A DNA stretch of 64,000 nucleotides from positions 167,725 through 231,724 of IMG/VR virus record IMGVR_UViG_3300042923_000474. The stretch is one strand, 5' to 3'. The notes under the pieces are model-generated. The model did no database searches. It saw only the letters and a program-made list of their open reading frames with translations, and was not told where the DNA came from. The position numbers and the translations under genes were made by a program. Below, one piece after another: positions 3,810 to 52,135 of the stretch (positions are counted from its first letter, which is position 1; every line of letters starts with the position of its first letter).

Positions 3810-3820
3810 CGACGTTCACC

Positions 3821-4954: not shown

Positions 4955-4969
4955 GCTGAACTCCTAGGC

Positions 4970-5293
4970 TTATCGGCCGTAGTGCATGTACAAGCGGCGG
5001 CTGTCCTGACCTTCCAGATCCTGAAGGCGGATACCCACCACACGCTTGAACAAAGGGTTGGTCGGCAACATGTCGTCGTTATCACCTACATAGATGATCT
5101 CGGCGCCTTCGAGGGAGGTCAGGTCGGTACCGGTGGTAACCCACTTGCCCTGATCCTCGGTGGGGTCGTACTGACCCAGTGCGGCCGACAGCGTTGTAAG
5201 TTTGTCTTCCGGGATGGGGCCTAACTCCAGCTCATTCAAGAATTCCTCGAATGGGGCGAAGTCAACGCGGAAGAAGTTGGGCAAAGTTTGCAT
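4970..5293 (-). CDS. C-terminal half of a split tail-fibre-family paralogue
   Basis: SLEGAEIIYVG..LPTNPLFKRV..RLYMHY matches the C-domain of 6736-7620; own GGAG RBS. Confidence 0.75.
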   Translation of the reverse strand: MQTLPNFFRVDFAPFEEFLNELELGPIPEDKLTTLSAALGQYDPTEDQGKWVTTGTDLTSLEGAEIIYVGDNDDMLPTNPLFKRVVGIRLQDLEGQDSRRLYMHYGR

Positions 5294-5295
5294 GG

Positions 5296-5793: not shown

Positions 5794-5800
5794 GGCTCAC

Positions 5801-6694
5801 CTACACCTTGTAGTGAAGCAAGAATTTACCCACGAACCAACCACCCGCCGCAGGTGGAGTAATGACCACCACATTGTTGTAGTCTGTGGAGTTTGCCTCG
5901 GGCACGTTTACGTTGGGTAGGGCATACTTGATGCAGCGAGCATCTTGCAGGCCACCCTCAGTCGCAGCCGGAACATAAGCGTTGAGCTTACGGCCAGCCA
6001 CCAGGCTCATGTACGACACCAAGTCTTTCGCCTGCGCAGTGCTGGGCAAAACCTGAAGCGTGGTCAAAGACTGCAGCAGTGCACTGAACTTGGAGAAGTC
6101 CGTCCCATAGGTCATGAAGTCGGCCATGGGTTTCGGGTTACCGCCCGGCGCTACTCCACTAACCAAGGTCAGCAGGAGCGGGGTGGTGGCAGGCACCTGT
6201 TCAGACACAGGCTTTTTGGTAGCCTTGCGGTTCCAGCGAAAAGACCCAATCCACGCGGGGTTGTTAGTCGGGAAGTTCCAAATGTAGCCGGTTTGCACCG
6301 TATTGGGAACCACTGCACGGTCCGAGTCCGAGGCGATGAACTTGGTGCCATACTTCTGGTTGATCCAGCGCATCGCCGATTCAATCTTGACGTTGACGCC
6401 GGTCAAGTCGTCAGGCGTGGCGTAGTCGTCGATTACCGGTACGCCTTGTTGGAACAAGACATCCGAAGACAGACGACGGTAGGTGAGCACGGTGGTGGCC
6501 ATGTAGCCGGAACCGGTACGAGGCATCACCGAAATTTGTGTGTTGCGAATCCCCTGACCAGTGATCGCTGCCGGAACACCCAAACGACAGTTATCTGGCG
6601 TGAGTTTGTACGGCAGCTGAGGATTGTCCCGATTGATCAAATCAAAGACCAATTCGGCAGATGTTTTTCGATAGTCTAAGTCCATCTTCTTCAT
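5801..6694 (-). CDS. Virion/tail-fibre family paralogue
   Basis: LVFDLINRDNP, TYRRL, PEANS..Y..V..GKFLLHY motifs. Confidence 0.75.
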   Translation of the reverse strand: MKKMDLDYRKTSAELVFDLINRDNPQLPYKLTPDNCRLGVPAAITGQGIRNTQISVMPRTGSGYMATTVLTYRRLSSDVLFQQGVPVIDDYATPDDLTGVNVKIESAMRWINQKYGTKFIASDSDRAVVPNTVQTGYIWNFPTNNPAWIGSFRWNRKATKKPVSEQVPATTPLLLTLVSGVAPGGNPKPMADFMTYGTDFSKFSALLQSLTTLQVLPSTAQAKDLVSYMSLVAGRKLNAYVPAATEGGLQDARCIKYALPNVNVPEANSTDYNNVVVITPPAAGGWFVGKFLLHYKV

Positions 6695-6707
6695 CCCAGT
6701 TGGAAGG

Positions 6708-6734
6708 GGCCGGGGAGTACCCGGCCACTATGCC
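6708..6734 (-). terminator. Intergenic hairpin with GCATA flank
   Basis: GGCCGGG/CCCGGCC stem, ACTATGCC adjacent. Confidence 0.6.
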
Positions 6735-6735
6735 G

Positions 6736-7620
6736 TCAGTCCGCCGAGTTCGGGTTATCCGGGTCGTTGAAGTGCAGGTAGAAGCGACCAGTGGGTGTGG
6801 TCACGCCGGTACGCAGCTCCAAGCACATCACGTACTTGTACGACTGGTTGGTGGGGAAGACCATGGTGTTCAGACCGCAGAAGATCACTTTGGCGCCGTT
6901 GAGCGACCAGGTGTTGCTGCTGTCGGAGTTGTTCCACAGTGTGGCGCCAGGACCCTGATCGAGTGCCTTAAGGGCCGTCACCAGGATGTCAGCATTGGCG
7001 GAAGACAGTACGCCTTCGGCCATGGCCAGCAATTGGTCACGGTAACCTGTCAGGTTCAGCGGGTAGGCGTACAGCAGTGCCGAGGTCTGAGTCGCCGGAT
7101 CGGCCACTGGGTAGTTCAAACCATTCAACGCCTTGACCGTGGTCAGGGTGTCGATGTTTGCACCACCTTGAACGACATCAAAGGACAACTGACCCAGCCA
7201 CAGAGGCGAAGCGTCCTTGGCCTTGATGGTCACGGTACCGGCACCTTGGCCATCCAGCACCACAGGCTCGCTGAGAATATCCTGCGGACCCAGCACGAGG
7301 CCGAAGTAGTACAGGATGTTCGACAACAGGTCGATGGTCGTTGCAGGTTGGTAAACCGGCAGAGGGCGGGTAGGACGGAACTTGGCGAAGTCTGCCAACT
7401 TCAAGCGATCGTATTTAACGGTCGCCTTACCTTCGAAACCAGCGCCTTGTTTCGGCGTTACCTTGGCGTAGGTGTTTTTGGTGGTAGTACCCTCCATCCA
7501 CGTCCCGGCGATCGGCTTGGGATCGGACCAGGTGAGGTTGGCTGCAGTGAACTGCGTGGTACTGTTGGCCGCATTCAAATAGTTGAAGAGGGCCTGCTTG
7601 GAATCTACGAAAACAGACAT
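6736..7620 (-). CDS. Virion/tail-fibre family paralogue
   Basis: KYDRLKL, LNGLNYP, GRFYLHFN motifs. Confidence 0.75.
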   Translation of the reverse strand: MSVFVDSKQALFNYLNAANSTTQFTAANLTWSDPKPIAGTWMEGTTTKNTYAKVTPKQGAGFEGKATVKYDRLKLADFAKFRPTRPLPVYQPATTIDLLSNILYYFGLVLGPQDILSEPVVLDGQGAGTVTIKAKDASPLWLGQLSFDVVQGGANIDTLTTVKALNGLNYPVADPATQTSALLYAYPLNLTGYRDQLLAMAEGVLSSANADILVTALKALDQGPGATLWNNSDSSNTWSLNGAKVIFCGLNTMVFPTNQSYKYVMCLELRTGVTTPTGRFYLHFNDPDNPNSAD

Positions 7621-7632
7621 GGCTGCCTCCTC

Positions 7633-8520
7633 TTAAAGGTTGAAGTACAGAATCCACTTGCCTGCGAGGCGTGGGTTGCTGGCGTCGGTGACCGTGAGGA
7701 TCTTCGCGTAGGCAAAACCTGGCTTGTTCGCCTCGGGGTGTATGGCGCTCGGTAGCGCCACCGCGGAGAACGTGCCGTTGGACATGTTCCACGGAGCTGT
7801 ATCGGCATTGTAGGTGCCCACAGCAATCGGCCAACCCGTCAAGCGAGTGATCTCGGCAATTACGCCGCCCTGACCACTGAGGACAACCGTGTTGCTAGCG
7901 GTCCAGCCTTGGGCCAGTGCGAACTCAGTGAAGTCCAGACCTGCAAAGACAAACTCAGGACGCAGACTGCGATCTGGCTTGGCCACGAAGTCGTTACCGC
8001 CTGGCCATTGGGCGCCATCCAGTTCAGTCACGGTCAGAATGTCGATACCGACTTGCTGCAGGCCACGGTTCCAGGTGACGGTGAAGCTACCCACGTAGGC
8101 CAGGTTATCGGCAGTGGCCGTCCAAACGCGTGCGGCACCGCTGTTGGTAGAGTTCCAGACGCTGCCCGTGATGCCGGACACTGTCAGGTTCACGCCGTAC
8201 AGTTGGTTGACGTAACCGATGGCCTGGGCCAGGGTCATGGAGGCGCCATCGTTCAGCCAGCGAGTGAATGCGATGTTGTTACCACGGAACAGGCTGGTCA
8301 GATCGCGGCGACGATACAGAACTTCCAGCACGCCTCGGTACTTGCTGGAGGACTTGGCCGTGATCTTGAGCTTGGTATTGCGACCGAAACTGTCAGCGGC
8401 AACAACCACGGGTTTACCGAAGATGAAGTCGGTGGTATTGATGGGCCATGGCAGCGTCGGGTTATCCGCGTTGATCTGCGCGATGGCCTCTTCGAGAGGA
8501 CTGCCTGTGAGAATTGGCAT
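7633..8520 (-). CDS. Virion/tail-fibre family paralogue
   Basis: INADNP, YRGVLEVLYRRRDL, PEANK..GKWILYFN. Confidence 0.75.
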   Translation of the reverse strand: MPILTGSPLEEAIAQINADNPTLPWPINTTDFIFGKPVVVAADSFGRNTKLKITAKSSSKYRGVLEVLYRRRDLTSLFRGNNIAFTRWLNDGASMTLAQAIGYVNQLYGVNLTVSGITGSVWNSTNSGAARVWTATADNLAYVGSFTVTWNRGLQQVGIDILTVTELDGAQWPGGNDFVAKPDRSLRPEFVFAGLDFTEFALAQGWTASNTVVLSGQGGVIAEITRLTGWPIAVGTYNADTAPWNMSNGTFSAVALPSAIHPEANKPGFAYAKILTVTDASNPRLAGKWILYFNL

Positions 8521-8530
8521 GTGCTTTTAC

Positions 8531-9298
8531 CTAGGCTGGATTGTAGTGGAAGTACATGGCGCCTTGTAAAAGGCCGCTCTGCACAGTCGACTGAATAACG
8601 ACGCGTTTGAACACAGGGTTGGCATCAGGTACTTCTGCCGTTGCCTTGTCCACAACTTTGCCTTTAACCCAGTCAGGGATACCCATGGCACGAGTCACTG
8701 TTTGAACGAGCGCCCAATCGGAATACTCGCCCTTGGCAGTTGGCTTCAATGCATCCTGGATACCAGAGAAGTCCGCACCCCACGTCCACATCCGGCTGGA
8801 TTGTCGGTTGGTATTGTTGGGGTGTTTGAAGATGTCCAGATCGGTCTTGCCAATCATCGAGTCCAGCCACGAGGGACCGAACGACAGATTGAGGTCCAGA
8901 CCACCGAACCACTGCAACGAGGTCTCTGCAATCTCGATGCGCGAAGAGATCGCCTCACCATCACCCAGCACAGGTGGGGTGTACTCTTCGAAGTCTTCGG
9001 GGTTGATGTCGAGGCCAAACTTGTTAGCCAGGCCCAGCACAATCATTTCACGGTTCATGGCTTCCAGAGAACGGAAGTCAAAAGACGTCACGTAGTCTGC
9101 CAGATTCATGCGGTCATAGTAGACATCGACCTCACCGTAGTAACCGCGCCCCGGAATACCGGAGATGGTCACCAGTGTGTTGCGGTCGTGCTCTGTGGTC
9201 GGTTGGGGTACCGAGAACGAGAGCCGCTTTTCCGTGAACTCCTTGGGTGGAGTGAACATGTCGTTTAGAACGACAAACATCCGTTCGGCGTTAGCCAT
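8531..9298 (-). CDS. Virion/tail-fibre family paralogue
   Basis: YYGEVDVYYDRMNL, PDANPVFKRV, MYFHYN. Confidence 0.75.
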   Translation of the reverse strand: MANAERMFVVLNDMFTPPKEFTEKRLSFSVPQPTTEHDRNTLVTISGIPGRGYYGEVDVYYDRMNLADYVTSFDFRSLEAMNREMIVLGLANKFGLDINPEDFEEYTPPVLGDGEAISSRIEIAETSLQWFGGLDLNLSFGPSWLDSMIGKTDLDIFKHPNNTNRQSSRMWTWGADFSGIQDALKPTAKGEYSDWALVQTVTRAMGIPDWVKGKVVDKATAEVPDANPVFKRVVIQSTVQSGLLQGAMYFHYNPA

Positions 9299-9308
9299 GG
9301 TTCACCCC

Positions 9309-10151
9309 CTATGCCAGGTCTGGATCGGGTTCATTGAAGTGAAGCGTCAGCTCACCTGTCAGACCCAAGCAGTTGGCATCCACCAGCATGACCTTAATGA
9401 AGCGGTCGTACTTCGGGTTGGCTTCATTCGGATGCTCGGCGGAAATACCCACCATGCGAATCGTTGCACCGGCCAGACTGAAACGGCTGATGCCTTCGAT
9501 CTTCCAATCGTCACCTGTCTGCGTTTTAAGCAGAGGACCCAACACGTTCACCGGGGCATCACCCACCACGATGTCCTTGAGCTGCTCGTAGGAGGTCGTG
9601 AAGTCACGCCAGTACGAATAGATCTGGGCATACGGTCGAGTGGTGGTCGCCGATGGGTAGCGCAGACCGTTGAGACGGGTCACCTTGAGGTAGTCCGCCA
9701 ACTGGTAGCCACCCGGACGGGTACCCACCGAAACAGTGCCAGTCCATGCCAAGCTGGTAGGCAGTGCCTCCAACTCAACCACGCCGCCTTGAGCTTTCTC
9801 TTCGTCAGTCAGCGCACGGATCAGTACATCTTTATCCGTGAGCAGTGTGCCGTAGCGTTTGTTCATGGCCGCAATGATGTCACTGGTGCTTTGCGGTTCT
9901 TTGACCGGCACCAACAAGGTCACTTGCGCAGCCAAGTCGGACAATGGGTTGCGATGGTAGCGGAACGTCTCGGAACCGGAGTACGCTGTCTCTTGGTTTT
10001 TGGCAGTGAGCACGATCGTCGTATTGAACTGCCCTACCGGAGTAATCGCGATAGGTGCTTCGAAGATGTATTCACTGGCCACCAAGTCAAGCTTGTTCAG
10101 CCGGTTGATCGATTCCACCATCACATCCAAAGAGGGTTTATAAAGCGACAT
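9309..10151 (-). CDS. Virion/tail-fibre family paralogue
   Basis: YSGSETFRYHR, LNGLRYP, EANPKYDR, LTLHFN. Confidence 0.75.
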   Translation of the reverse strand: MSLYKPSLDVMVESINRLNKLDLVASEYIFEAPIAITPVGQFNTTIVLTAKNQETAYSGSETFRYHRNPLSDLAAQVTLLVPVKEPQSTSDIIAAMNKRYGTLLTDKDVLIRALTDEEKAQGGVVELEALPTSLAWTGTVSVGTRPGGYQLADYLKVTRLNGLRYPSATTTRPYAQIYSYWRDFTTSYEQLKDIVVGDAPVNVLGPLLKTQTGDDWKIEGISRFSLAGATIRMVGISAEHPNEANPKYDRFIKVMLVDANCLGLTGELTLHFNEPDPDLA

Positions 10152-10162
10152 AATCGTGCCCT

Positions 10163-10996
10163 TTAGGAAGTGAGGTTATAGTGGAAGTAGGCGATACCCG
10201 AGTAGTCCATGGTTTGCACGTTGGCAATATCCTTGATCACCTGAACAAGCACTCGATCGTAGTCCTTGTTAGCTTCCGGTACCTGCGCCGTACTGTAGTC
10301 GAACATGGGGTTGTTCCATGCCACGGGCCAGTTCGAGTAACCGAACGAAGCCATCAGTGTCCGCATGGCGTTCCCGTCGTTAACGATGTTGTAGAACGGG
10401 TGCTTGCGAACTTTGGCGTAATGTTCCGACCAGTCTTCACTGTAAGTGAACAACGTGATCGGTCGCTTGTTCAGCGTGTCCAGCGTTTGACCCGGATGCA
10501 ACATGACATCGAGATCACGCATGACGACAACCTCAGACAGCAGAGGACGACGTCGGGTAAAGCGAATAACAAACTGGCCGATGTAGGACAATGAAGTGGT
10601 AAGGGCTACGAGGGGGATGTTGACCTCTTCGTTTTCGCCCAACCAGCTGTAGTCAACCTGCTCGAAGTCATCGACATCCAACTGGATGCCCAACTCTTGG
10701 CCGATATACGGCAACATCGAATGCAGGTTTCCGTTACTCAGCCCATTGATCCGGGGACGGATATCACCAAACGCGCTTGTAAGGTCCATCCGCTCGTACT
10801 CAACGGGGACCATGCCTTCATAGGTCGTATCGGGAATCGGCACAACGACACTACGGACCAGGGTAGGTAGGGGACCCTGGACAAACTTAGGCGTGGTAAA
10901 AAGCACATCGTCCGGGTTCAACGGGGAGGGAAGGACATTCTGCTGATTGATGAGATCAACTAAAACGTCCCTGCCCTTTCCAGGGACAAGGATCAT
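10163..10996 (-). CDS. Virion/tail-fibre family paralogue
   Basis: Start moved to ATG 10996 (AGGAG RBS); LVDLINQQN, YEGMVPVEYERMDL, PEANKDYDRV, YFHYN. Confidence 0.75.
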   Translation of the reverse strand: MILVPGKGRDVLVDLINQQNVLPSPLNPDDVLFTTPKFVQGPLPTLVRSVVVPIPDTTYEGMVPVEYERMDLTSAFGDIRPRINGLSNGNLHSMLPYIGQELGIQLDVDDFEQVDYSWLGENEEVNIPLVALTTSLSYIGQFVIRFTRRRPLLSEVVVMRDLDVMLHPGQTLDTLNKRPITLFTYSEDWSEHYAKVRKHPFYNIVNDGNAMRTLMASFGYSNWPVAWNNPMFDYSTAQVPEANKDYDRVLVQVIKDIANVQTMDYSGIAYFHYNLTS

Positions 10997-11091
10997 TTTT
11001 CTCTCCTGAAACCGTGATCTGAAGGGAAGGAATGTGTGCCGGATAGGAAACATTCACATAGGATTAGCCCTTGCTGAAATAAGATAGGTAA

Positions 11092-12486: not shown

Positions 12487-13966
12487 AGGCAAGCACCCCT
12501 ATGAACTCAACCCAGTTGACTTCGTTAACAACCCAACTCACCGCGCACACATTCTCGAAGGTCTGGAAGGTTTCCTGAAACTGGATTACACCCTAGACCA
12601 CAGCCCGGTGGCTGAAGGCCCAGCCGAAGCAGCCCGTAAATGGATTCGTCAGGTTATTGACTGGGCCCAGTGCAATAAGGGCTACGCCGAGCAGATCGAA
12701 GAGGTCAAGTCTGGTGGTATGACCCGGCAACAAGCCGAGGATATGGTTGATGACATTCGCAAGGACGTTATCGGCTTCCACAAAGACGTGGATCGCTCAC
12801 TGGAACTGATCAAGGAAATGCAAGCGCGTCCTGATGCCGACCCTGCGCTGGACTACATTGGTAAGGCTCTACGTCGTGCCAAATCGGGTGGTGGCATTGA
12901 CGTGTTCGCTCTGTCGGCTAAGGCTGTCCGTCATAAAGACGTTGAGCAGATCATGCCGGTCAGCCTGCAACAGATTGCCCATCGCCTCCGCAGTCGGTCA
13001 GGACCTGTGGTCAGTCAGCTGGAAGTGATTGAAGCCATCGAAGCATTGCCAGAAAGCCTGCGTAAGCATCGCGATCTGGTGGGCCGTGGTCTGACCGAAC
13101 CTAAGGTCACCTACGATCCAGTGGTCACCGAAGTCAAGCAGTACATCGAGAACGTTCAGGCGGCTCGTGGCTATCTCAGTCAAGCCGACATGCCTGACCA
13201 ACTGGAAGAGGTGGAAGACTATCTGGTCGCCCACCTGCGTTGGCTGATGGCACCTCGCCATAACCTGAACCCGGTGATGGAACTCAAACACATCGCCGAG
13301 ATCATGCGCGATTGGATCGCTGCCGAAAGTTTGGCCTCGCATGTGAAGTTTGACATGTCGAACATGGTCGAGTCTCTGGAGAAGCTGGCTGCACAACACG
13401 CTGCTGCTCCGGTGGAAGTGAAGCTTGACGGTAGCGGTACTCGTACCGTATCGCGCCTTGAGCACACGCTGGAAGTCCTCTCTGGCGCCGCTGATGCTCA
13501 CCCCCTGGACATCGACCAACAGAAGCTGCGTGAAGTTGAATTGTGGCTCAAGGCCATCGTCCTGAACAACCCAGGTTTCAAGAACCTCGGGCAAGAAGGC
13601 TACATCCTCGTACCGGCTGGCAACAACGTACCGGGCCGTGTGGTTGATGCGGTGAATGATTACCTCATCATGTACGGTCAGGGTACTCACAAGGCTGAAG
13701 ACCTGCGTGGTCAGGCTGCTCGTTCTGGTTCTGCGGCCATCTGCAACATGCCTGAATGGTTCGCTCAGACCTACGGCCATGTCAGCAAGGGCGGCTTTGC
13801 CTCGCTGATGTACCACACCATGTTGGCGGTGGCTGCGCAGGACGAACCCAAGGGTGTCTACCTGAAAGGGGCGAAGGTCGAAGAGTTGGAAGCTGCCCTG
13901 AAGGCTGGGGTCAAAACGGCGTGGACCGACTTTGTCGAGTCTGCTGAGAAGGTGGATGCACGATGA
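12476..13966 (+). CDS. Hypothetical protein (496 aa, helical)
   Basis: Long ORF with phage-type codon usage, overlapping both neighbours. Confidence 0.85.
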   Translation: MSHKGKHPYELNPVDFVNNPTHRAHILEGLEGFLKLDYTLDHSPVAEGPAEAARKWIRQVIDWAQCNKGYAEQIEEVKSGGMTRQQAEDMVDDIRKDVIGFHKDVDRSLELIKEMQARPDADPALDYIGKALRRAKSGGGIDVFALSAKAVRHKDVEQIMPVSLQQIAHRLRSRSGPVVSQLEVIEAIEALPESLRKHRDLVGRGLTEPKVTYDPVVTEVKQYIENVQAARGYLSQADMPDQLEEVEDYLVAHLRWLMAPRHNLNPVMELKHIAEIMRDWIAAESLASHVKFDMSNMVESLEKLAAQHAAAPVEVKLDGSGTRTVSRLEHTLEVLSGAADAHPLDIDQQKLREVELWLKAIVLNNPGFKNLGQEGYILVPAGNNVPGRVVDAVNDYLIMYGQGTHKAEDLRGQAARSGSAAICNMPEWFAQTYGHVSKGGFASLMYHTMLAVAAQDEPKGVYLKGAKVEELEAALKAGVKTAWTDFVESAEKVDAR

Positions 13967-14667
13967 GTAAGCGCAAGATTGCCTGTATCCTGGCAACCAA
14001 CCTCGTCAGCACAATTGGCGATAAAGGTAAGTTGCCCTGGCACCTACCCGATGATTTGGCTCGCTTTAAGCGAATCACTTCGGGCAACACCATCGTTATC
14101 GGTCGTCGTACTCATGAGAGCTTGCAAGAGTTTCGTGATACGGCTATCCGTGCCCATGACCGCAAGGTTAAGGAAACGTGGGAGTGGTTTGACAGTGAGA
14201 AGGCGACTCTGGAAACACAGGGTCACTCAGAAGCCAAACTGAAACGCCTGATCAGTAAGAAGGCGTATCAACGCGACCTGTCTCTGTCGTTGATCCATCC
14301 GGTCTACCCCACCCACAGTTTGCCTAACCGCAAAACCATCGTGGTGTCCAAGACCATGGCGGAAGTCACCGATAACCCGAACATCGTTGTCGTGCGGTCG
14401 GTAGACGAGGCGATTGTGGTGTGGCGCGCTCGTGGTCAGGGTACGTTGTATTGTGCCGGTGGGGCTGAGCTTTACAAAGAGTTCTGGCCCCACATGGAGC
14501 TGCTGCACCTTACGCTGCTCAACAACAGCACTGAAGGTGACACCAAGTACCCGTTTGAACTCGCAGGTGGCGAATGGCGGATGCTCGCTCGTCAGATCAT
14601 GCGCAAGGATGACGGGTCAGGCGAAGTGAGTCACACCTTCTTCACCATGGACCGAAAGGGCGCTTAA
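13963..14667 (+). CDS. folA: Dihydrofolate reductase with large insertion
   Basis: IGDKGKLPWHLPDDLARFK, IGRRTHES, LPNRKTIVVS, AGGAELY, GDTKYP. Confidence 0.92.
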   Translation: MSKRKIACILATNLVSTIGDKGKLPWHLPDDLARFKRITSGNTIVIGRRTHESLQEFRDTAIRAHDRKVKETWEWFDSEKATLETQGHSEAKLKRLISKKAYQRDLSLSLIHPVYPTHSLPNRKTIVVSKTMAEVTDNPNIVVVRSVDEAIVVWRARGQGTLYCAGGAELYKEFWPHMELLHLTLLNNSTEGDTKYPFELAGGEWRMLARQIMRKDDGSGEVSHTFFTMDRKGA

Positions 14668-14669
14668 CA

Positions 14670-15044
14670 ATGAAGCTTTGGACAATCCAGCTCGGCCAGT
14701 GGCGTCTAGCACAAAAGAAAAACATTACAATGGTTAACACCACGGTGATGTCTGGAATGTCCTGGCTTGCTCCTAGTTGGGACATGGTTAAAGGTCACAA
14801 GCTGAAAATCTACACAGATGCTCAGTACACTGCCAAGTTCATCCCCATGATGGTCTTGTCGGAATGTGACCACCGCGACAAATGGCTAGAACTTGCCAAC
14901 ATGGAAGAGGTAGCCATTGCTTGTTATTGTAAGGCTGGGGCATTTTGTCACCGCATGTTGCTGGTTGAGATACTGCGGGTATTCTGCGAACGAGAGGGGA
15001 TTGAGTTTACTTACATGGGTGAACTCAGGAAGGAGGCAGCATGA
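14670..15044 (+). CDS. DUF488-like protein
   Basis: LAPSWDMV...CYCKAGAFCHRMLL pattern recalled for phage DUF488-related proteins. Confidence 0.6.
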   Translation: MKLWTIQLGQWRLAQKKNITMVNTTVMSGMSWLAPSWDMVKGHKLKIYTDAQYTAKFIPMMVLSECDHRDKWLELANMEEVAIACYCKAGAFCHRMLLVEILRVFCEREGIEFTYMGELRKEAA

Positions 15045-23776: not shown

Positions 23777-25120
23777 ATGAAAGAGCCAATCGGCCTCGGC
23801 CAGTTGAACAAATTGCAACGTCTGATCAAGCGTTTGCTGGAACACGGCATCCCGAAAGATGACCGTACCGGTGTGGGTACTCTGAGTGAGTTCGGCCACA
23901 TCGAACGTTACAACTTGGAGGAAGGCCATCCTCATGAGTCTGCCAAGTTCACCCCGTTCAAGATCAACGTGGCTGAACTGCTGTGGATCATCTCCGGCAG
24001 CACTCGCCTGAAGTTCCTCAAGGAGTACGGTTGCCACGTGTGGGACGAATGGGTTAAGCCTGGCACTGAAGTGTGGGGTAAGACCTACACGTACGCTGAG
24101 CGCTTGGACATTCTGAACAAGCGTGTGGAAAGCGGCAAGATCCCAGAAGCCGACAAAGATCACTACGTCGATACCTGGCTGAGTGTCAGCAACGGCGCCG
24201 TGATGACGGAAGAAGATGTGGTCAACATGTTGAACCACTTCGAGATCCCAACTCAGGAACTGATCGACGGTGAACTGGGCCCTGTGTACGGTCAGCAGTG
24301 GCGCAACATTGTTGACACTCGCGTGATTGAAGATCATGAGCGCGAGGAGTATGAGGCACGCGGTTACGAAATGATCGGCTCTATGCTGACCATGGAAGAT
24401 CTGTCCGACATGAAGTGCAATGGCAGCAAGACGGTCATGCAGCGTAAGATCGACCAGCTGGCCAATGTGATCGAACAGCTCAAAACCAAGCCAGACGATC
24501 GCGGCATTATCGTCAATGCTTGGCACGTGCCTGATCTGGATCAAATGGCGCTGCGCCCTTGTCACACGCTGTTCCAATTCGAAACCACTCGTCGTCCTTG
24601 GGATGAGGTGTTCTCTGAGATTCTTCAGGAAGACCACTACGAGGAATTCGACAGCGTCGTTGTTGGCATGTCTTCGGACAGTAAGGGCGGTGAAGATTGG
24701 ATCGAGGCACAGAAGCCTGGCGGTGGGTGGCGTCACCCAGACTACTACAAGACCGGTTATGCGTTTGCCGAACTTAAGGGTCTGTCCACTCGCAAGCTGA
24801 ACTGCCTGCTGTACATGCGTTCGAACGACAGCTTCTTGGGTCGTCCGTTCAACGTGTCTCAGTACGCACTGCTGACCCGCATGGTTGCGCAAGTGGTGAA
24901 CATGAACCCTGGTGAGTTTATCCTCGTCAACGGTGATGTGCACCTTTACAACTCGCACATTGAGCAGGCCAAGGAGCTGTTGAAACAAGACGGTACCTTG
25001 CCACTGCCTTGGGTGAAGATCAACCCAGAAGTTCTGACCATCGACGGTTTCCAGGTCAGCGACTTTGAGCTTTTAAATTACAAGCATGGGCCACGCATTG
25101 GCGCCCCCGTAGCTGTATAA
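23777..25120 (+). CDS. thyA: Thymidylate synthase with three insertions
   Basis: DDRTGVGT, ELLW, WDEW, LGPVYGQQWR, RPCH, RSND..LG.PFN, GDVHLY. Confidence 0.95.
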   Translation: MKEPIGLGQLNKLQRLIKRLLEHGIPKDDRTGVGTLSEFGHIERYNLEEGHPHESAKFTPFKINVAELLWIISGSTRLKFLKEYGCHVWDEWVKPGTEVWGKTYTYAERLDILNKRVESGKIPEADKDHYVDTWLSVSNGAVMTEEDVVNMLNHFEIPTQELIDGELGPVYGQQWRNIVDTRVIEDHEREEYEARGYEMIGSMLTMEDLSDMKCNGSKTVMQRKIDQLANVIEQLKTKPDDRGIIVNAWHVPDLDQMALRPCHTLFQFETTRRPWDEVFSEILQEDHYEEFDSVVVGMSSDSKGGEDWIEAQKPGGGWRHPDYYKTGYAFAELKGLSTRKLNCLLYMRSNDSFLGRPFNVSQYALLTRMVAQVVNMNPGEFILVNGDVHLYNSHIEQAKELLKQDGTLPLPWVKINPEVLTIDGFQVSDFELLNYKHGPRIGAPVAV

Positions 25121-39217: not shown

Positions 39218-39251
39218 GACGAGCCCCCACCTTCGGGTGGGGGTTTTATGC
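39211..39251 (+). terminator. Hairpin terminator
   Basis: GGCATAA..CCCCCACC-TTCG-GGTGGGGG-TTTTATGC. Confidence 0.8.
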
Positions 39252-39283: not shown

Positions 39284-39306
39284 AAACCTAAACTATCGAC
39301 TTGAAT
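39284..39306 (+). promoter_or_regulatory. Putative phage early promoter
   Basis: AAACCTAAACTATCGACTTGAAT. Confidence 0.7.
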
Positions 39307-39330
39307 GTATCCCACTCAAAAGGATTTACA

Positions 39331-39615
39331 ATGAACAAGTTGCTGCAGGCCATGTTGATCTCTGTGATGTTCTCTCAGAGTGCTTTGGCTCTATCGAACT
39401 CTACGCCCCCTGTCAAAACCAACTTGGATGTCATCCGTGAGTTGGCCAAGCGGACGGGGATGTCAGTGGCTGAGTGCGTCTCAGGGCTGTGTCGCGATAC
39501 AGAAGATGGCTACTATGTGACCATCGATAATTCAGATCGTGACGGGTTCTATATCTACGATCCTCTGATCACTATGCCATCGGGTGAAGACGATACAACT
39601 TCGCCTCAGAACTAA
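39331..39615 (+). CDS. Small exported protein
   Basis: Start ATG 39331; MNKLLQAMLISVMFSQSALA signal peptide; directly after promoter motif. Confidence 0.75.
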   Translation: MNKLLQAMLISVMFSQSALALSNSTPPVKTNLDVIRELAKRTGMSVAECVSGLCRDTEDGYYVTIDNSDRDGFYIYDPLITMPSGEDDTTSPQN

Positions 39616-40786: not shown

Positions 40787-41296
40787 ATGCCAAAACAATC
40801 CAAAATCTTCTACACATCCTGCATGGGGCAGGGGAGTGGAGAGTTCACCTTAGTTCAGGACTACACTGGACGAGGTGTTTACATCGGCAAGCGTAAGCCA
40901 GCTGACGAAAAAGAGCTGGCTCTCTACCATGAGCAATTGCGAGCCGACCACATGATCGAGCCACCTACCCAGTGTTGGGTCTGGATCATGCGCCCCATTG
41001 CGACGGGGGACCTTATCAATGAGGGTTCCACTATCGCACGAACAATGTACGACGCCATCGGTAGTCACATGGATGCCGACTGGAACAAGCGTAAGGCCAT
41101 TCCCTGCGAACAGCTGTGTTATGTAGGGAGCGACTTTGCGGGGAGATTAGATAAGGTGCGTCCGTTACTGAACGCATTTGATCGGGCAATCATTCGTGAG
41201 CAGTTAGCCAAACAACTGCTTTCCAATCTACCAGTTCATAGCCGGGGCATGTTCGACCGCTATCAACTGCAAAATCTCAGAGACCTAAGGGGGTAA
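40787..41296 (+). CDS. Hypothetical protein
   Basis: 169 aa ORF. Confidence 0.75.
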   Translation: MPKQSKIFYTSCMGQGSGEFTLVQDYTGRGVYIGKRKPADEKELALYHEQLRADHMIEPPTQCWVWIMRPIATGDLINEGSTIARTMYDAIGSHMDADWNKRKAIPCEQLCYVGSDFAGRLDKVRPLLNAFDRAIIREQLAKQLLSNLPVHSRGMFDRYQLQNLRDLRG

Positions 41297-41298
41297 CT

Positions 41299-42372
41299 GT
41301 GAAGCAAGCAGAATATCTGAATCTCATGCTGGGCGTTAAGTACCAGTTGGAGTCGGACGACATCAACCTGATCATTGCGATCGCGGCTATCTTGCGTGAT
41401 CGCAACATCAAGGTGTCGTTTGCATCGGCCCCGCTGTTCGATGAACTGAACGGCGATGAGTTCCGCAGTGAGCGTGCGCTGATCTACAAGATGGTCACTC
41501 AGGGTTTCCACTTCTGGGAAGTTACTCAGATGCTGGGCGGCATGGGTTCTGCATGGCATGCGATCCAGTACCTGCGCGAAGTCATGAATAGTAATGGCGG
41601 TACACCGTCGCTGCGTAAAGTGGCCATGGTCTTCGTCAGCGAGTGGCCGGTGCCAATGCCACCACCTGTGTCGGAATCCGACATGGCGCAGCCTGAGCGT
41701 CAGATCACGCCGGTTGAAGGCTACAAGGGCTGGTTGGTTACCGGCAAGATGGAACTCGAAGATGCAGACCACACCAAGCGCACCTTCGATCTGAACACCC
41801 AACCTGAAGGCGAAGAGGCGGCTCAAGAGCCAGCGGTTGTTCAGATTGCGCGCATGTTGCGTGTGACCTGGAATGCCGACAAAGGTGTCGTTGAACCTGA
41901 GCGTCTCGAAAAGATTGCCATGTTGTTGGGTCACATGCTGCTGTCTGAGCGTGAACACTTCATGGGCAAGCTGAAAGAAGCACAATCGGCAGCCAAACCT
42001 GAAGCACCTCTGATCTGGCCGAAGAACAAAGACCACTGGATCTTTGACCCTCGCCTGTCTGCGCTGAATGCTCCGATGCCACTCAACAACGACTTCCCTG
42101 CGCGTCAGCGTCTGACAGAAGTTGCTCGTGAAGCCGCTCGCTTTGCAGTATCGCGTGCCAGCGGTATGGGCACCAGCCGTGTGTTCAACATCGAAGGCTT
42201 TGTTGAGAACGTTGCCATCGGCCTGTTCGGTGACGGTACCAACGAGCACAACTTCGATTTCCGCACGCTGGTGTTTGACAAAGAAGTTGCAGCCGAAGCG
42301 CCGAAACCTGCTGAACCTGCTCCAGCACCTGCACCGGTTGAAACCGAAGCTCCAGCTGAAGTGGGAAAGTAG
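41299..42372 (+). CDS. Hypothetical protein, short (357 aa) form of candidate frameshifted gene
   Basis: Ends GTG GGA AAG TAG. Confidence 0.85.
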   Translation: MKQAEYLNLMLGVKYQLESDDINLIIAIAAILRDRNIKVSFASAPLFDELNGDEFRSERALIYKMVTQGFHFWEVTQMLGGMGSAWHAIQYLREVMNSNGGTPSLRKVAMVFVSEWPVPMPPPVSESDMAQPERQITPVEGYKGWLVTGKMELEDADHTKRTFDLNTQPEGEEAAQEPAVVQIARMLRVTWNADKGVVEPERLEKIAMLLGHMLLSEREHFMGKLKEAQSAAKPEAPLIWPKNKDHWIFDPRLSALNAPMPLNNDFPARQRLTEVAREAARFAVSRASGMGTSRVFNIEGFVENVAIGLFGDGTNEHNFDFRTLVFDKEVAAEAPKPAEPAPAPAPVETEAPAEVGK

Positions 42373-42420
42373 AAGCCGGCGTTGCGCCACAGCTTGCTTC
42401 CAAGTTAGCAGCGGCCGGCT
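42363..42420 (+). other. Candidate programmed -1 frameshift signal (G GGA AAG + stem-loop)
   Basis: Heptamer 42363-42369 in X XXY YYZ phase; AGCCGGC 42374-80 pairs with GCCGGCT 42414-20, with inner stems. Confidence 0.7.
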
Positions 42421-42611
42421 CGTTTCCTGTAGCACCGCAAGCCCCGGCAGAAGAAACTGTTCTGCCAGTCAGTGAACGTGGGGCACCTGCCAGCACGCCA
42501 TTGATCGAAAGACTGCAATCCCAAAAGACTGCAGCCAAACCCGTAGCAAAGAAACCTGCTGCAAAACCACGTCAGCCACGTAAACCGGCAGACAAAAAAC
42601 CTACCAAGTAA
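42363..42611 (+). CDS. -1 frame extension (80 aa Ala/Pro/Lys-rich tail) of 41299 gene
   Basis: Open from GGG AAA 42363 to TAA 42609-42611; no ATG/GTG; in-frame TGA at 42357; hairpin follows at 42619. Confidence 0.75.
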   Translation, partial: GKVEAGVAPQLASKLAAAGSFPVAPQAPAEETVLPVSERGAPASTPLIERLQSQKTAAKPVAKKPAAKPRQPRKPADKKPTK

Positions 42612-42618
42612 CACATCT

Positions 42619-42651
42619 GGCCTGCTCCCTGCCGGGAGTGGGCCTTATGCC
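42619..42651 (+). terminator. Hairpin terminator after frameshift extension
   Basis: GGCCTGCTCCC/GGGAGTGGGCC-TTATGCC. Confidence 0.75.
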
Positions 42652-42666
42652 ATCGGAGAGAAACAC

Positions 42667-43947
42667 ATGAACTCTACACTCAACAAAATTGCAGCGGGCG
42701 TTTACATCACTCAGCTGTTGTATCGTTGCCAGATTTCCAACATGGCACACCTGCTACCCGCCGGTGAAGAAACTGAATTCCGCAATGAGGTCTTCCACGG
42801 CGAGGTTGGTGAGCTGTACGGACCAAAGGCTGCCCAGTGCTTCAATACGGTCAGAGCGATTGCTGTGGGTCATCTGGGGCTCTTACAGGCTATCCGTCTG
42901 CACGCTGACCTCTTTACGCCGGGGGTGTTGGCAGTGGCTACCCGTCACTTGCTTGAAGAACCCGACATTGACTGGAACGATGTGGGCTGCCTACTGACAG
43001 GTACGGCTGAGCAGTTCAAGTTGGACAGCATATTGGCTGAGCACTTAGAACGTCCGCTTTGTCAGATGTCTGGCGATGCTGTCCGTGATGCGTTGAAACA
43101 AGCGGTGGGTATGTTTGAAAATGCTCGCAGCTATGACGAAACCTTTGTCAAGACATCGGTGTTCCGCTATGCCGATCTATGGACTCGGATGTTCCACAAT
43201 CCGCGGGAGTTGATGCGGGCGCTGGACGAGGTGGGCGTCAAGCAGGGTCCTGATGATTCCGAAGACGTCAATGCAATGGCCAACATCATGGGCGGTGAAC
43301 CCGATGGCGTTTTCGAGGCCTTCTGTATTCGTCACAGCCTGGGGTTGGAAACTGCCAAGGTCTGGGAAGAGCAAATGGTCACCTGGGGTTACCGCGAATA
43401 CGCAGGGGCTACTCGCGGCATGATGGCTGATGGCCGTGCCGAGTTCAAGACATTCATGGCCAGCGCAGTGGCGGCAGGCTACCCTGTCTACATTCAGGAT
43501 AAGCACCTGTCCGACTTCGAGGATCTGTTGCTGCGCATTCCTGGCTGCACCACGGATGAAGAACGCGACATGGTTGAGAACTTCATCTACTGCATCGCAC
43601 CGATCCTGTTCTTTGAACTGAGTGAGCACGGTCAGTACCGCAATGCGCGGTGGCGTGGTATCAGCGTGTCTTCAGATTACGACACAATGATCCGGGAGCT
43701 TGAGAACTACGAAGGTTCTGGCTGGTTGCCTCTGGTTCGTTTGCTGACTATGCGGTTCGCCAATCGTCGCTTTGACCGTCAAACTATCTTCAGCACCTAT
43801 GAAGAAGAGGTCAAGGAACAGATTGAACGCGCCACCCTAAATGCCAACGTGTCCCAAGCAACCCGTCGCCACACCTACTTGGTTCAGGAACTTCTGCGCG
43901 TCATTGAAGATGACATGTACGACATGAAACTCTTCGGTCACAACTAA
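42667..43947 (+). CDS. Hypothetical protein (426 aa)
   Basis: GGAG RBS; long ORF. Confidence 0.85.
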   Translation: MNSTLNKIAAGVYITQLLYRCQISNMAHLLPAGEETEFRNEVFHGEVGELYGPKAAQCFNTVRAIAVGHLGLLQAIRLHADLFTPGVLAVATRHLLEEPDIDWNDVGCLLTGTAEQFKLDSILAEHLERPLCQMSGDAVRDALKQAVGMFENARSYDETFVKTSVFRYADLWTRMFHNPRELMRALDEVGVKQGPDDSEDVNAMANIMGGEPDGVFEAFCIRHSLGLETAKVWEEQMVTWGYREYAGATRGMMADGRAEFKTFMASAVAAGYPVYIQDKHLSDFEDLLLRIPGCTTDEERDMVENFIYCIAPILFFELSEHGQYRNARWRGISVSSDYDTMIRELENYEGSGWLPLVRLLTMRFANRRFDRQTIFSTYEEEVKEQIERATLNANVSQATRRHTYLVQELLRVIEDDMYDMKLFGHN

Positions 43948-51000: not shown

Positions 51001-51082
51001 GATTTAAACTCGCAATGACCATTAGGTATTTATTAGCTAATACATGTTGATGAATACCATCTATCCCCAAAGGAGCAACACC

Positions 51083-52135
51083 GTGACTTCAAAAGTAAAC
51101 ATCCTGGCATGCGGCGGCTTCGGTCAAAACATCATGCTGCTGCTCGCCAAGCGTGAGTCTTTCGCATCCCTGGGTCAGGCGTTGAACCTGCATGCTTTCG
51201 ACACCTCCAAGTCGAACCTCAAGCGTTTCGCTGGTAGCGCTATCGAGTCCGCTGTCAAGAAGCACCTGGTAGAAGGCGCTGACGGTTCGGGTAAACTGCG
51301 TGCTGAAAACCACGAAGCCATCACTGCGCTCGTGACCGACGTGGTTAACAACAACGAGATCGAAGACGGCCTGACCATCATCGTCTCCTCGGCCTCCGGT
51401 GGTTCGGGTTCGAAGTTCGCTGACGACCTACACGAACAACTGGCCAAACGTGGTCGCCGTGTAATCTCCATGATCCTGGGCACCGACGAAGACAACGAAG
51501 CGCTGGGCAACACCCTGAAGACCGTCAAGACCTACCGCCACAAGGCCGGCCTGGGCGACAAGAACTTCGTCATGTTCTACGGCCAGAACCGTTTCCCGGT
51601 CGAAGGTCAGGAAGGCAAGACCTACATCGACGAGGCGTTGGCTGACGAGCTGTTCGTGACCAACCTGGAAGACATCCTGATGATTGGTCATCCAGAGAAT
51701 AACACTCTGGACACCAAAGATCAGCTGCGCTTCCTGAACTATCGCCTGGACAGCGAAGGTGGCCGTGAAGGTAAAGGTCAGCTGCGCTTCCTGTCGCTGA
51801 TCAGCCGTACTGAAAAGCAGGACTTCCCAACCGACGACGACGTCCCGGTTGCGGCACTGTCTCTGCTGGCCAAACACGGCATCACCCCGCAGTACGCAAC
51901 TGGCACCGGTTACTCCACTCGTGGCGTACTGGGTGAAAGCCTGTCGTTCGCTGACGGCGTGGTTGAAGTTCAGTTCCAACTCTTCTCCGGCCGCACCAGC
52001 AAGCTGGCTAACCAGCTGGACAAGCAGCAGAAGCTGTACGACACCATCCGCGCCAAGCAAGACGAGAACAGCTCCGGCGATGACTTCAAGCGTTCCGACA
52101 AGGACGTGGTCACCGACAGCGGTTCGTTCCTGTAA
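51083..52135 (+). CDS. phuZ: Phage tubulin PhuZ
   Basis: GTG start after AAGGAG; ACGGFGQNI, DTSKSN, ADGSGKLR, SASGGSGS, acidic C-tail DVVTDSGSFL. Confidence 0.92.
   Translation: MTSKVNILACGGFGQNIMLLLAKRESFASLGQALNLHAFDTSKSNLKRFAGSAIESAVKKHLVEGADGSGKLRAENHEAITALVTDVVNNNEIEDGLTIIVSSASGGSGSKFADDLHEQLAKRGRRVISMILGTDEDNEALGNTLKTVKTYRHKAGLGDKNFVMFYGQNRFPVEGQEGKTYIDEALADELFVTNLEDILMIGHPENNTLDTKDQLRFLNYRLDSEGGREGKGQLRFLSLISRTEKQDFPTDDDVPVAALSLLAKHGITPQYATGTGYSTRGVLGESLSFADGVVEVQFQLFSGRTSKLANQLDKQQKLYDTIRAKQDENSSGDDFKRSDKDVVTDSGSFL

What the first reader, a model, noticed from the sequence alone, without database searches (positions are those of the whole stretch)
41299..42651. Candidate programmed -1 frameshift in a non-tail gene that switches an acidic tail to a histone-H1-like basic tail
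Seen: the 357-aa ORF ends GTG GGA AAG TAG, so G GGA AAG (42363-42369) lies in exact X XXY YYZ phase immediately before the stop. The -1 frame is closed by TGA at 42357, has no ATG or GTG, and runs 80 codons (VEAGVAPQ…KTAAKPVAKKPAAKPRQPRKPADKKPTK) to TAA 42611, followed directly by the terminator hairpin at 42619. A stem-loop starts 4 nt after the heptamer (AGCCGGC/GCCGGCT, GTTGC/GCAGC, AGCTTG/CAAGTT; 42374-42420). Known: GGGAAAG is the lambda gpG/gpGT slippery site, and 3' structures stimulate -1 shifts. This gene is not next to a tape-measure or tail-tube gene and lies among putative early genes. Inference: two isoforms (357 and 437 aa) at a fixed ratio, the long one gaining a nucleic-acid-binding or condensate or nucleus-targeting tail; an undescribed recoding use in nucleus-forming phages.
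Basis: partly seen in the sequence, partly recalled or inferred. Interest (0 to 1): 0.85.

Follow-up and report, generated by a model that had tools for sequence, protein, structure and literature searches.

The report
Conserved -1 frameshift in jumbo-phage gene
A gene of unknown function in an uncultured, tubulin-encoding jumbo phage almost certainly uses a classical lambda-type ribosomal slip (G GGA AAG followed by a stop) to attach a conserved, positively charged 80-residue tail that its more distant relatives encode in one uninterrupted frame.

Summary
ORF 41299-42372 ends GTG GGA AAG TAG. The -1 frame is shut by TGA at 42357 and then runs 80 codons to TAA at 42609-42611.

Comparative evidence makes a real programmed -1 frameshift the best explanation (confidence about 0.8):
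- Eight independent assemblies (six distinct genomes, down to 67% nucleotide identity) keep TGAAGT-GGGAAAG-stop and a 74-80-codon -1 ORF.
- Indels in that ORF are all in phase, and dN/dS in the -1 frame (0.22-0.27) equals that of the gene body (0.28). The other two frames carry stops.
- Four of the eight assemblies (three distinct sequences) have no ATG, GTG or TTG in the -1 ORF.
- Unsplit relatives carry the same C-terminal module in frame. P0009 matches the -1 peptide at E = 3e-8, and most family members end in K/P/A-rich basic tails.
- The split state is monophyletic and derived.

The 3' stem-loop is strong only in the window and is not conserved. The gene sits in a unit bounded by phiKZ-late-type hairpin+TATG cassettes, not evident early genes. 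The tail's function (nucleic-acid binding, condensate or targeting) is untested.

The mechanism is classical (lambda G/GT, dnaX, T7 10A/10B). The gene family, which has no known fold or function, and the phage lineage are new.

The parts
41287..41293 (+). Shine-Dalgarno-like AAGGGGG, 5 nt before the GTG start; it overlaps the end of the upstream 169-aa gene (stop at 41294-41296)
   Evidence: homologues start at the same MKQ/MNQ position
41299..42372 (+). Zero-frame ORF, 357 aa (short isoform). It has three predicted folded modules (1-120, 145-231, 241-325) and a disordered acidic Pro/Ala tail from about residue 327
   Evidence: dN/dS 0.28 against the 60%-identical relatives
42355..42371 (+). 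17-nt island GCTGAAGTGGGAAAGTA, invariant in all split-clade genomes and flanked on both sides by divergent, indel-rich linker sequence
   Evidence: it is the longest run of invariant codons in the gene
42357..42359 (+). TGA that closes the -1 frame two codons before the shift site. It confines any productive shift to 42360-42371
   Evidence: conserved in L002 and L004
42363..42369 (+). Slippery heptamer G GGA AAG in X_XXY_YYZ phase
   Evidence: described as highly shift-prone in E. coli and as the lambda G/GT site (PMC5009743, PMC3296357)
42370..42372 (+). Zero-frame stop TAG immediately 3' of the heptamer. It is TAA in L004, L016 and L018, so the stop is kept although the overlapping -1 codon changes
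42369..42611 (+). -1-frame extension of 80 codons plus TAA. The long isoform would be 437 aa, with junction ..AEVGK|VEAGV..
   Evidence: no stops, in-phase indels, dN/dS 0.22-0.27, and no canonical start in L013, L017, L016 or L018
42374..42420 (+). Stem-loop starting 4 nt after the heptamer (-23.6 kcal/mol). It may stimulate the shift in this genome, but it is not conserved in sequence or strength in relatives
42446..42466 (+). Second small hairpin (GGCAGAA / TTCTGCC arms) inside the -1 ORF. Its arms are invariant at synonymous sites in the split clade and it is absent from unsplit L014. It lies 66-78 nt from the shift site and its role is unknown
42450..42518 (+). Conserved peptide motif of the extension (EETvLPVSERGAPASTPLIErLQ), also present in frame in the unsplit relative P0009
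   Evidence: E = 3e-8
42525..42608 (+). K/P/A-rich basic tail: 28 aa, net charge +10, pI 11.4. It ends PTK*, and that end aligns at the nucleotide level with the true stop region of the unsplit relatives
42619..42651 (+). Conserved hairpin (42619-42644) followed by TTATGCC (42645-42651). This is a probable transcription-unit boundary: an end-of-unit hairpin plus a phiKZ-late-type TATG promoter for the next gene (42667-43947)
   Evidence: compensatory pairs; 13 copies against 4.5 expected; PMC4666361

Best explanation
This is a genuine programmed -1 ribosomal frameshift of the classical bacterial X_XXY_YYZ type. Ribosomes translating the 357-aa ORF reach G GGA AAG (42363-42369). The next zero-frame codon is a stop.

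A fraction of ribosomes slip one base back, with tRNA-Gly moving GGA to GGG and tRNA-Lys moving AAG to AAA. Equivalently, the P-site tRNA-Lys may slip while the stop codon waits in the A site. These ribosomes then read GTA GAA GCC and so on for 80 more codons. The result is a 357-aa short form with an acidic disordered end and a 437-aa long form.

The long form adds a linker, a conserved roughly 20-residue motif and a lysine/proline/alanine-rich basic tail. The family's ancestral state carried the basic tail in frame on every molecule. In this clade the frameshift makes tail attachment sub-stoichiometric or tunable.

Shown here: the site anatomy, its conservation, coding selection in the -1 frame, the absence of an independent start, homology of the -1 product to the C-termini of unsplit relatives, and the derived, single origin of the split.

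Inferred: that the ribosome (not the polymerase) slips; that both isoforms are functional; that the tail binds nucleic acid or a partner; and the efficiency, which by analogy with lambda G/GT would be a few percent unless the local stem-loop raises it.
For: 1. Anatomy is exactly as described.
2. Eight assemblies from different samples give six distinct sequences at 67-96% nucleotide identity. All have TGAAGT-GGGAAAG followed by TAG or TAA and a -1 ORF of 74-80 codons. All 11 distinct proteins of the clade, from at least 16 contigs, end AEVGK.
3. There is a 17-nt invariant island at the site inside the most variable part of the gene. Its five invariant codons are the longest such run in the gene (P about 0.02).
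4. In the -1 frame dN/dS is 0.22-0.27 with no stops. The other two frames give dN/dS above 1 with 1-5 stops. The gene body gives 0.28.
5. L013, L017, L016 and L018 have no ATG, GTG or TTG in the -1 ORF, and TGA closes the frame two codons upstream.
6. The -1 peptide matches the interior of the single-ORF relative P0009 (E = 3e-8, composition-corrected). It also aligns collinearly with the basic C-termini of P0004-7. The last codons and stop align at the DNA level with the true stop of unsplit relatives.
7. The gap to the next gene is 55 nt only if the -1 ORF is counted (294 nt otherwise), against 36-71 nt in unsplit relatives.
8. The split clade is monophyletic (100/99) and nested among single-ORF members.
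9. G_GGA_AAG is highly shift-prone in E. coli and is the lambda G/GT site, where the stop lies immediately downstream.
Against: - There is no protein, ribosome-profiling or read-level evidence.
- No stimulatory element is conserved. The 3' stem-loop is strong in the window (top 1% of native windows), moderate in L002 (4%) and ordinary in L004 (61%). An upstream SD-like run exists only in the L002/L004 subclade and is about 18 nt away.
- The host is unknown, so whether it has the single tRNA-Lys(UUU) that makes A_AAG shifty cannot be checked.
- If efficiency is only a few percent, most molecules would lack a tail that every unsplit relative carries. That is unusual, though it parallels lambda G/GT and T7 10A/10B.
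- Homology of the basic tail itself to the tails of unsplit relatives is weak and low-complexity.
Confidence: 0.8

Rival explanations
1. A corrective rather than regulatory frameshift. An ancestral one-base indel split the gene, and efficient slippage at the heptamer simply restores the full-length protein. The 357-aa form is a by-product with no function of its own.
For: Every unsplit relative carries its C-terminal tail constitutively. The split arose once. The review (PMC5009743) lists translational 'correction' of indels as a known use of frameshifting.
Against: The zero-frame stop directly after the heptamer is conserved, switching between TAG and TAA while the overlapping -1 codon changes. 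This is the arrangement of two-product sites such as lambda G/GT. No strong conserved stimulator exists that would give high efficiency. The state has persisted over about 0.7 substitutions per site without reverting to a single ORF.
Confidence: 0.12
2. Two separate genes. The -1 ORF is translated on its own as a small basic protein, by non-canonical initiation or by termination-reinitiation after the TAG.
For: L002 has TTG and GTG codons early in the -1 ORF, and a TTG at codon 45 or 41 is shared by the window, L002 and L004.
Against: No start codon is conserved. L013, L017, L016 and L018 have no ATG, GTG or TTG at all. Selection acts on the codons upstream of the shared TTG (dN/dS 0.33-0.48). 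The codons around the stop (AGT GGG AAA GTA GAA) include no near-cognate start. No gene caller ever called the ORF. The module is fused in frame in P0009.
Confidence: 0.04
3. RNA-level slippage. The phage or host RNA polymerase adds or drops a base at GGGAAAG, so a subset of mRNAs encode the fused protein.
For: It would give the same product and the same conservation pattern. Chimallivirus-type RNA polymerases are non-canonical (PMC4666361).
Against: Known transcriptional slippage needs much longer homopolymer runs than G3 or A3 (established knowledge; reviewed in PMC5009743). The exact X_XXY_YYZ phase and the adjacent stop are features of ribosomal sites, not polymerase sites.
Confidence: 0.02
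4. A decaying remnant. A frameshift mutation truncated the gene, and the -1 ORF is an untranslated relic.
For: Distant relatives are single ORFs.
Against: At dS of about 1 the relic would have accumulated stops and out-of-phase indels. Instead it has none, shows dN/dS of 0.22-0.27, and keeps a nearly invariant 20-aa motif.
Confidence: 0.015
5. An assembly or sequencing indel in this contig.
For: None, beyond the general frequency of homopolymer errors.
Against: Eight independent assemblies from JGI, ENA and Logan share the same frame structure, including strains that differ by about 4% and about 32% in nucleotides. At least 16 contigs encode proteins ending AEVGK.
Confidence: 0.005

Closest known systems
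Bacteriophage lambda G/GT tail assembly chaperone frameshift
   Same: The heptamer G GGA AAG is identical and the zero-frame stop lies immediately downstream. The -1 shift yields a C-terminally extended minor product (about 4% in lambda), and no elaborate stimulator is required (PMC3296357; PMC5009743).
   Different: The gene is unrelated: no PHROG or Pfam hit, 357 aa rather than about 140, and it does not lie between a tail tube gene and a tape measure gene. Its neighbours are the DNA ligase, PhuZ and nucleotide-metabolism genes. The extension is a disordered basic tail rather than a folded T domain.
E. coli dnaX tau/gamma -1 frameshift
   Same: It is a non-structural gene. One mRNA gives two isoforms that differ by a C-terminal partner-binding region, the slippery site ends in A_AAG, and a 3' stem-loop is present in this window.
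   Different: In dnaX the shifted product is the short one, and both an upstream SD-like element and the downstream hairpin are conserved stimulators. Here the shifted product is the long one and no stimulator is conserved.
Phage T7/T3 gene 10A/10B capsid frameshift
   Same: A -1 shift near the end of the ORF adds a C-terminal extension to a minority of molecules (PMC5009743).
   Different: T7 gene 10 is a capsid gene with a G_GUU_UUC-type site and long-range 3' effects. Here the function is unknown and the site is lambda-type.
Unsplit members of the same protein family (P0004-P0016, P0018; uncultured jumbo phages)
   Same: They share the three-module protein and the synteny, and most carry a K/P/A-rich basic C-terminal tail. 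P0009 carries the LPVxERGAP motif.
   Different: They encode the whole protein in one frame and have no GGGAAAG at the equivalent position.

Membership tests
Programmed -1 ribosomal frameshift site (bacterial X_XXY_YYZ type) | Slippery heptamer in the X_XXY_YYZ phase of the upstream ORF, of a type known to shift | tested here: met
   G GGA AAG at 42363-42369. It is the only in-phase copy in 64 kb. Literature.
Programmed -1 ribosomal frameshift site (bacterial X_XXY_YYZ type) | A -1 ORF that begins at the site, lacks its own start and extends the protein | tested here: met
   TGA lies two codons upstream. The ORF runs 80 codons and has no ATG or GTG. Four of the eight assemblies have no ATG, GTG or TTG at all.
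Programmed -1 ribosomal frameshift site (bacterial X_XXY_YYZ type) | Heptamer and frame arrangement conserved in diverged relatives; purifying selection on the -1 frame | tested here: met
   Six distinct genomes down to 67% nucleotide identity, a 17-nt invariant island, and dN/dS of 0.22-0.27.
Programmed -1 ribosomal frameshift site (bacterial X_XXY_YYZ type) | 3' stimulatory RNA structure 5-9 nt downstream (common but not obligatory) | tested here: inconclusive
   The window has a -23.6 kcal/mol stem starting 4 nt downstream (top 1% of native windows). L002 ranks at 4% and L004 at 61%. The sequences are unrelated. Rfam gives no hit.
Programmed -1 ribosomal frameshift site (bacterial X_XXY_YYZ type) | Transframe protein actually made | not testable with these tools
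   Needs proteomics, a reporter assay or ribosome profiling.
Lambda-type tail assembly chaperone (G/GT) | Located between the major tail or tube gene and the tape-measure gene; homology to tail assembly chaperone families | tested here: not met
   No PHROG, Pfam or NCBIfam hit. Neighbours are ORFans, the NAD-dependent ligase and PhuZ. A BFVD hit to a tail assembly chaperone is non-significant (E = 1).
Linker histone H1/H5 | Winged-helix globular domain plus a K/A/P-rich C-terminal tail | tested here: not met
   There is no Pfam linker-histone hit. Only the composition of the last 28 aa (net +10) resembles an H1 C-terminal domain.
ChmC (chimallivirus nucleus-associated RNA-binding, condensate-forming protein) | Whirly (beta-beta-beta-alpha repeat) fold, about 250 aa, with an N/G-rich then acidic disordered C-terminus | tested here: not met
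   The model is mostly helical with three modules. The tail is K/P/A-rich. ChmC is described in bioRxiv 10.1101/2023.09.22.559000.
Chimalliviridae-like (nucleus-forming) jumbo phage, as genome context | PhuZ tubulin, split multisubunit RNA polymerase genes, paralogous phiKZ-type virion proteins, chimallin shell protein | tested here: inconclusive
   PhuZ hit at E = 7.5e-36, with 26-32% identity to cultured chimalliviruses. Weak hit to an RNA polymerase beta fragment. An array of virion-protein paralogues. TATG-type cassettes. Chimallin was not found in the window ORFs scanned, and the rest of the 231.7-kb contig was not available.

The most novel reading that the evidence does not exclude
In one lineage of nucleus-forming-type jumbo phages, recoding has been recruited to dose a conserved basic, partner- or nucleic-acid-binding C-terminal module on a replication-region protein. 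The ratio of tail-less to tailed isoforms would then control where the protein acts (for example nucleic-acid- or shell-associated versus free) or how it assembles, as a dnaX-like logic in a phage compartment. It would be the first regulatory frameshift known in this phage group outside structural genes.
Probability: 0.2. Interest if true: 0.75.

Novelty: new member of a known kind. Interest (0 to 1): 0.55.

Why it matters
It adds a well-supported recoding event, by comparative-genomic standards, to a phage group where I found none described. It sits in a gene family with no known fold or function, which automatic annotation truncates: every gene caller ended the protein at AEVGK and left about 240 nt unannotated.

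The family also offers a natural experiment. Unsplit relatives carry the basic tail on every molecule, whereas the split clade has made it conditional. That gives a direct handle for asking what the tail does and why its stoichiometry matters.

Practically, it shows that jumbo-phage 'intergenic gaps' after a slippery heptamer should be checked for frameshift extensions.

Tried and rejected
- **GenBank phages.** Megablast and tblastn with both pieces, with distant family members and with both neighbouring genes found no match.
- **Family and structure libraries.** Pfam, PHROGs, NCBIfam and a PDB sequence profile found nothing. ESM Atlas scores were 0.57 or lower and uninformative. Foldseek against PDB and BFVD, with both models, gave no match at E <= 0.001. 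Function therefore stays unknown.
- **Rfam** over 41000-43000 found nothing.
- **Upstream SD-like stimulator:** not conserved.
- **Conserved 3' structure:** not demonstrable.
- **Hop over the TAG to the next AAG in frame 0:** rejected, because frame 0 closes again 11 codons later and only the -1 frame is conserved.
- **An apparent second in-phase site** (AAAGGGC at the end of ORF 13963-14667) is simply followed by an ordinary ATG-started ORF at 14670-15044.
- **A coordinate slip of my own.** In one search I treated reverse-complement positions as plus-strand positions. This was corrected.
- **Tool availability.** The structure tools were temporarily unavailable and were rerun later.
- **The metagenome scan** returned only one extra locus.
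Full report
**1. Observation**

The + strand ORF 41299-42372 starts at a GTG five bases after an AAGGGGG run and encodes 357 aa. It ends GTG GGA AAG TAG, so G GGA AAG (42363-42369) is in X_XXY_YYZ phase directly before the stop.

The -1 frame carries TGA at 42357-42359. It then runs through the heptamer and 80 further codons to TAA at 42609-42611. It contains no ATG or GTG and a single TTG at codon 45.

The stem-loop at 42374-42420 folds at -23.6 kcal/mol. A hairpin at 42619-42644 follows the -1 stop.

On its own an in-phase XXXYYYZ near an ORF end is not rare. Sixteen of 184 stop-to-stop ORFs in the window have one. However, 42363 is the only GGGAAAG in the 64 kb that is in phase with a long ORF.

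**2. What the genome is**

The window is part of IMGVR_UViG_3300042923_000474, a 231.7-kb contig. It encodes:
- a PhuZ-type tubulin (51044-52135, E = 7.5e-36), a phiKZ-group-type DNA polymerase, thymidylate synthase and an NAD-dependent ligase;
- DHFR, dCTP deaminase and a ten-gene array of phiKZ-type virion-protein paralogues at 579-11053.

PhuZ is only 26-32% identical to those of cultured Erwinia, Ralstonia, Xanthomonas and Serratia chimalliviruses. The target gene and its neighbours have no match in 50,697 GenBank phage records. This is therefore a deep, uncultured, chimallivirus-like lineage.

**3. The family and the key comparison**

The large protein databases hold a small family: 8 proteins by word search and 23 by exhaustive profile search. 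All come from contigs of up to about 230 kb with the same gene order.

*The split clade.* The closest relatives (60% amino-acid identity) end in ...EAEVGK exactly like the window. Their DNA shows the same GGGAAAG, an immediate TAG or TAA, and an open -1 frame ending ...KPTK.

I obtained DNA for eight independent assemblies from JGI, ENA and Logan. They represent six distinct sequences with pairwise identity from 96% down to 67%. Every one has TGAAGT-GGGAAAG-stop and a -1 ORF of 74-80 codons. The length differences are all multiples of three.

All 11 distinct protein variants of this clade, on at least 16 contigs, end AEVGK. An assembly error is therefore excluded for practical purposes.

*The unsplit relatives.* More distant relatives are single ORFs.
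- P0009 (435 aa), whose locus even keeps the adjacent ligase, contains in one frame a Pro/Ala linker followed by EVLPVEERGAPATTDLIKDLQ.
- The window's -1 peptide matches this stretch with E = 3e-8 under compositional correction.
- Most other members end in in-frame K/P/A-rich basic tails.
- The -1 peptides align collinearly with those ends.
- The last codons and the stop of the -1 ORF align at the nucleotide level with the true stop region of unsplit relatives.

The -1 ORF is therefore the C-terminal part of the same gene.

*Origin.* A maximum-likelihood tree places the split genes as one clade (100/99 support). The clade is nested among unsplit members and falls in a well-supported (95/95) group with P0009 and P0004-7, whose internal branching order is unresolved. 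The split is derived, arose once, and has been kept across about 0.7 substitutions per site.

**4. Is the -1 ORF translated, and from where?**

- Nei-Gojobori estimates between the two subclades give dN/dS of 0.22-0.27 in the -1 frame with no stops. The same nucleotides read in the other two frames give dN/dS above 1 and 1-5 stops. The gene body gives 0.28.
- Selection also acts upstream of the only shared TTG (0.33-0.48). That TTG is CTG in L013 and L017.
- L013, L017, L016 and L018 have no ATG, GTG or TTG anywhere in the -1 ORF.
- The -1 frame is closed by a conserved TGA two codons before the heptamer, and the zero frame stops directly after it. Entry into the -1 frame must therefore happen within about 12 nt, and those 12 nt contain exactly the slippery heptamer.
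- The 17 nt GCTGAAGTGGGAAAGTA are invariant in all genomes, although both flanks are the most variable, indel-rich part of the gene.
- The five codons involved form the longest run of invariant codons in the gene.
- The stop is kept as TAG or TAA even though that change alters the overlapping -1 codon.
- Without the -1 ORF the gap to the next gene would be 294 nt. With it the gap is 55 nt, like the 36-71 nt in unsplit relatives.

**5. Mechanism**

G_GGA_AAG is listed among the most shift-prone -1 heptamers in E. coli (PMC5009743). It is the lambda G/GT site, where the G stop lies immediately downstream and the zero frame is kept about 96% of the time (PMC3296357).

The most likely mechanism is tandem slippage of tRNA-Gly and tRNA-Lys, or P-site slippage of tRNA-Lys while the stop occupies the A site. 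Both give ...AEVGK-VEAGV... and a 437-aa product.

Stimulators are not established:
- The window's stem-loop is in the top 1% of native 60-nt windows. The L002 hairpin is a different sequence at 4%, and the L004-type region is ordinary at 61%.
- No SD-like element is conserved upstream.
- Rfam has no match.

Efficiency is therefore unknown. By analogy it may be a few percent, and possibly higher in the window's genome.

Transcriptional slippage is unlikely on runs of only three G and three A. A hop in frame 0 is excluded because that frame closes again within 11 codons.

**6. What the two products differ by**

The short form ends in a disordered acidic Pro/Ala stretch (net -8 over the last 60 aa, pLDDT below 50 from residue 327). 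The extension adds three things:
- a variable linker;
- a nearly invariant motif of about 20 aa (42450-42518);
- a 28-aa K/P/A-rich tail (42525-42608; net +10, pI 11.4).

The composition resembles H1-type or bacterial histone-like tails, but there is no linker-histone domain. It is not ChmC, which has a Whirly fold and an N/G-rich then acidic tail.

A 17-sequence alignment gave a model with mean pLDDT 75 and three modules. Foldseek found nothing significant in PDB or BFVD. The third module is shared with small uncharacterised proteins.

Nucleic-acid or partner binding by the tail is a reasonable inference from its composition and its conservation across the family. It is not tested here.

**7.

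The hairpin after the -1 stop is conserved in all family loci, with structure-preserving changes, and is followed by TTATGCC. That heptamer occurs 13 times in the window against 4.5 expected (0 of 100 shuffles reach 13). Most copies sit immediately after a GC-rich hairpin at gene boundaries on either strand.

One copy, with a bidirectional hairpin at 39224-39243 and TATG at 39247-39250, lies upstream of the four-gene unit that ends with our gene. phiKZ late promoters for the non-virion RNA polymerase have the consensus TATG, with the G as the start site (PMC4666361).

By analogy the gene lies in a middle- or late-type unit. 'Early' is not supported, and the hairpin is not a canonical terminator.

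**8. Verdict**

A programmed -1 frameshift is the best explanation (about 0.8), with a further 0.12 on the variant in which the shift is merely corrective.

The mechanism is a known kind and the closest precedent is lambda G/GT. The gene family, the phage lineage and the evolutionary pattern are new. In that pattern, an ancestrally constitutive basic tail became conditional through recoding.

I found no description of such a site in nucleus-forming phages in the searchable literature. That is absence in that library only. Experimental confirmation is still required.

Noticed in passing
window 42619-42651, and copies at 11093(-), 16019(-), 16052(+), 25152(+), 39217(-), 39224-39251(+), 50150(-), 52170(+), 54075(+): A recurring cassette: a GC-rich hairpin immediately followed by TTATGCC, at gene boundaries on both strands. 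There are 13 copies of the heptamer against 4.5 expected. The copy after the -1 ORF is conserved, with compensatory stem changes, in relatives whose proteins are only 32-39% identical. It is probably an end-of-unit hairpin plus a phiKZ-late-type TATG promoter.
   Followed up: partly
window 42446-42466: A small hairpin (GGCAGAA / TTCTGCC arms) inside the -1 ORF. Its arm codons are invariant at synonymous sites in all split-clade genomes while the loop codons vary. It is absent from the unsplit relative L014. At 66-78 nt from the shift site it is too far away for a classical stimulator.
   Followed up: partly
window 42363-42368 with 42423-42428 (and the equivalent positions in L002 and L004): In the minimum-free-energy folds of all three genomes the slippery GGGAA(A) pairs with the downstream UUCCC/UUUCCU that encodes the conserved Phe-Pro, enclosing the variable hairpin. 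This may simply follow from the conserved FP codons.
   Followed up: no
window 579-11053 (- strand): An array of ten consecutive ORFs of 255-377 aa. Those scanned hit the PHROG 'virion structural protein' families 1037, 2935 and 3589. They are highly diverged paralogues (9-23% identity), as in the phiKZ-type head or inner-body paralogue families.
   Followed up: partly
window 23777-25120: The thymidylate synthase is 447 aa, but it matches a 335-position profile across residues 13-447. This implies a large insertion of more than 100 aa within the enzyme.
   Followed up: no
window 51044-52135: The PhuZ-type tubulin is only 26-32% identical to those of cultured chimalliviruses, which marks a deep uncultured lineage. 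No chimallin was recognised among the window ORFs scanned.
   Followed up: partly
window 39301-39615: The first gene of the unit encodes a 104-aa protein with an N-terminal hydrophobic, signal-peptide-like segment. It has no family hit.
   Followed up: no
L002 4370-4591 and L014 4370-4843: Some relatives carry an extra small gene (73 aa or 157 aa) inserted between this gene's terminal hairpin cassette and the conserved gene of about 430 aa. L007 has a GIY-YIG-like ORF upstream. These are signs of local mobile-element or moron traffic at the cassette boundaries.
   Followed up: no
proteins P0017, P0020-P0027 (no window coordinates): The third module of the family (WP..HW...AA.FAVSRASG...NIEGFV) is homologous to a domain in many small uncharacterised proteins (consensus LPDGS..DHW..AARYAVRGAT..FDPDALVQN..GLLGY). 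It is duplicated in P0017 and fused to a MazG-like region in P0022. No Pfam family covers it.
   Followed up: partly
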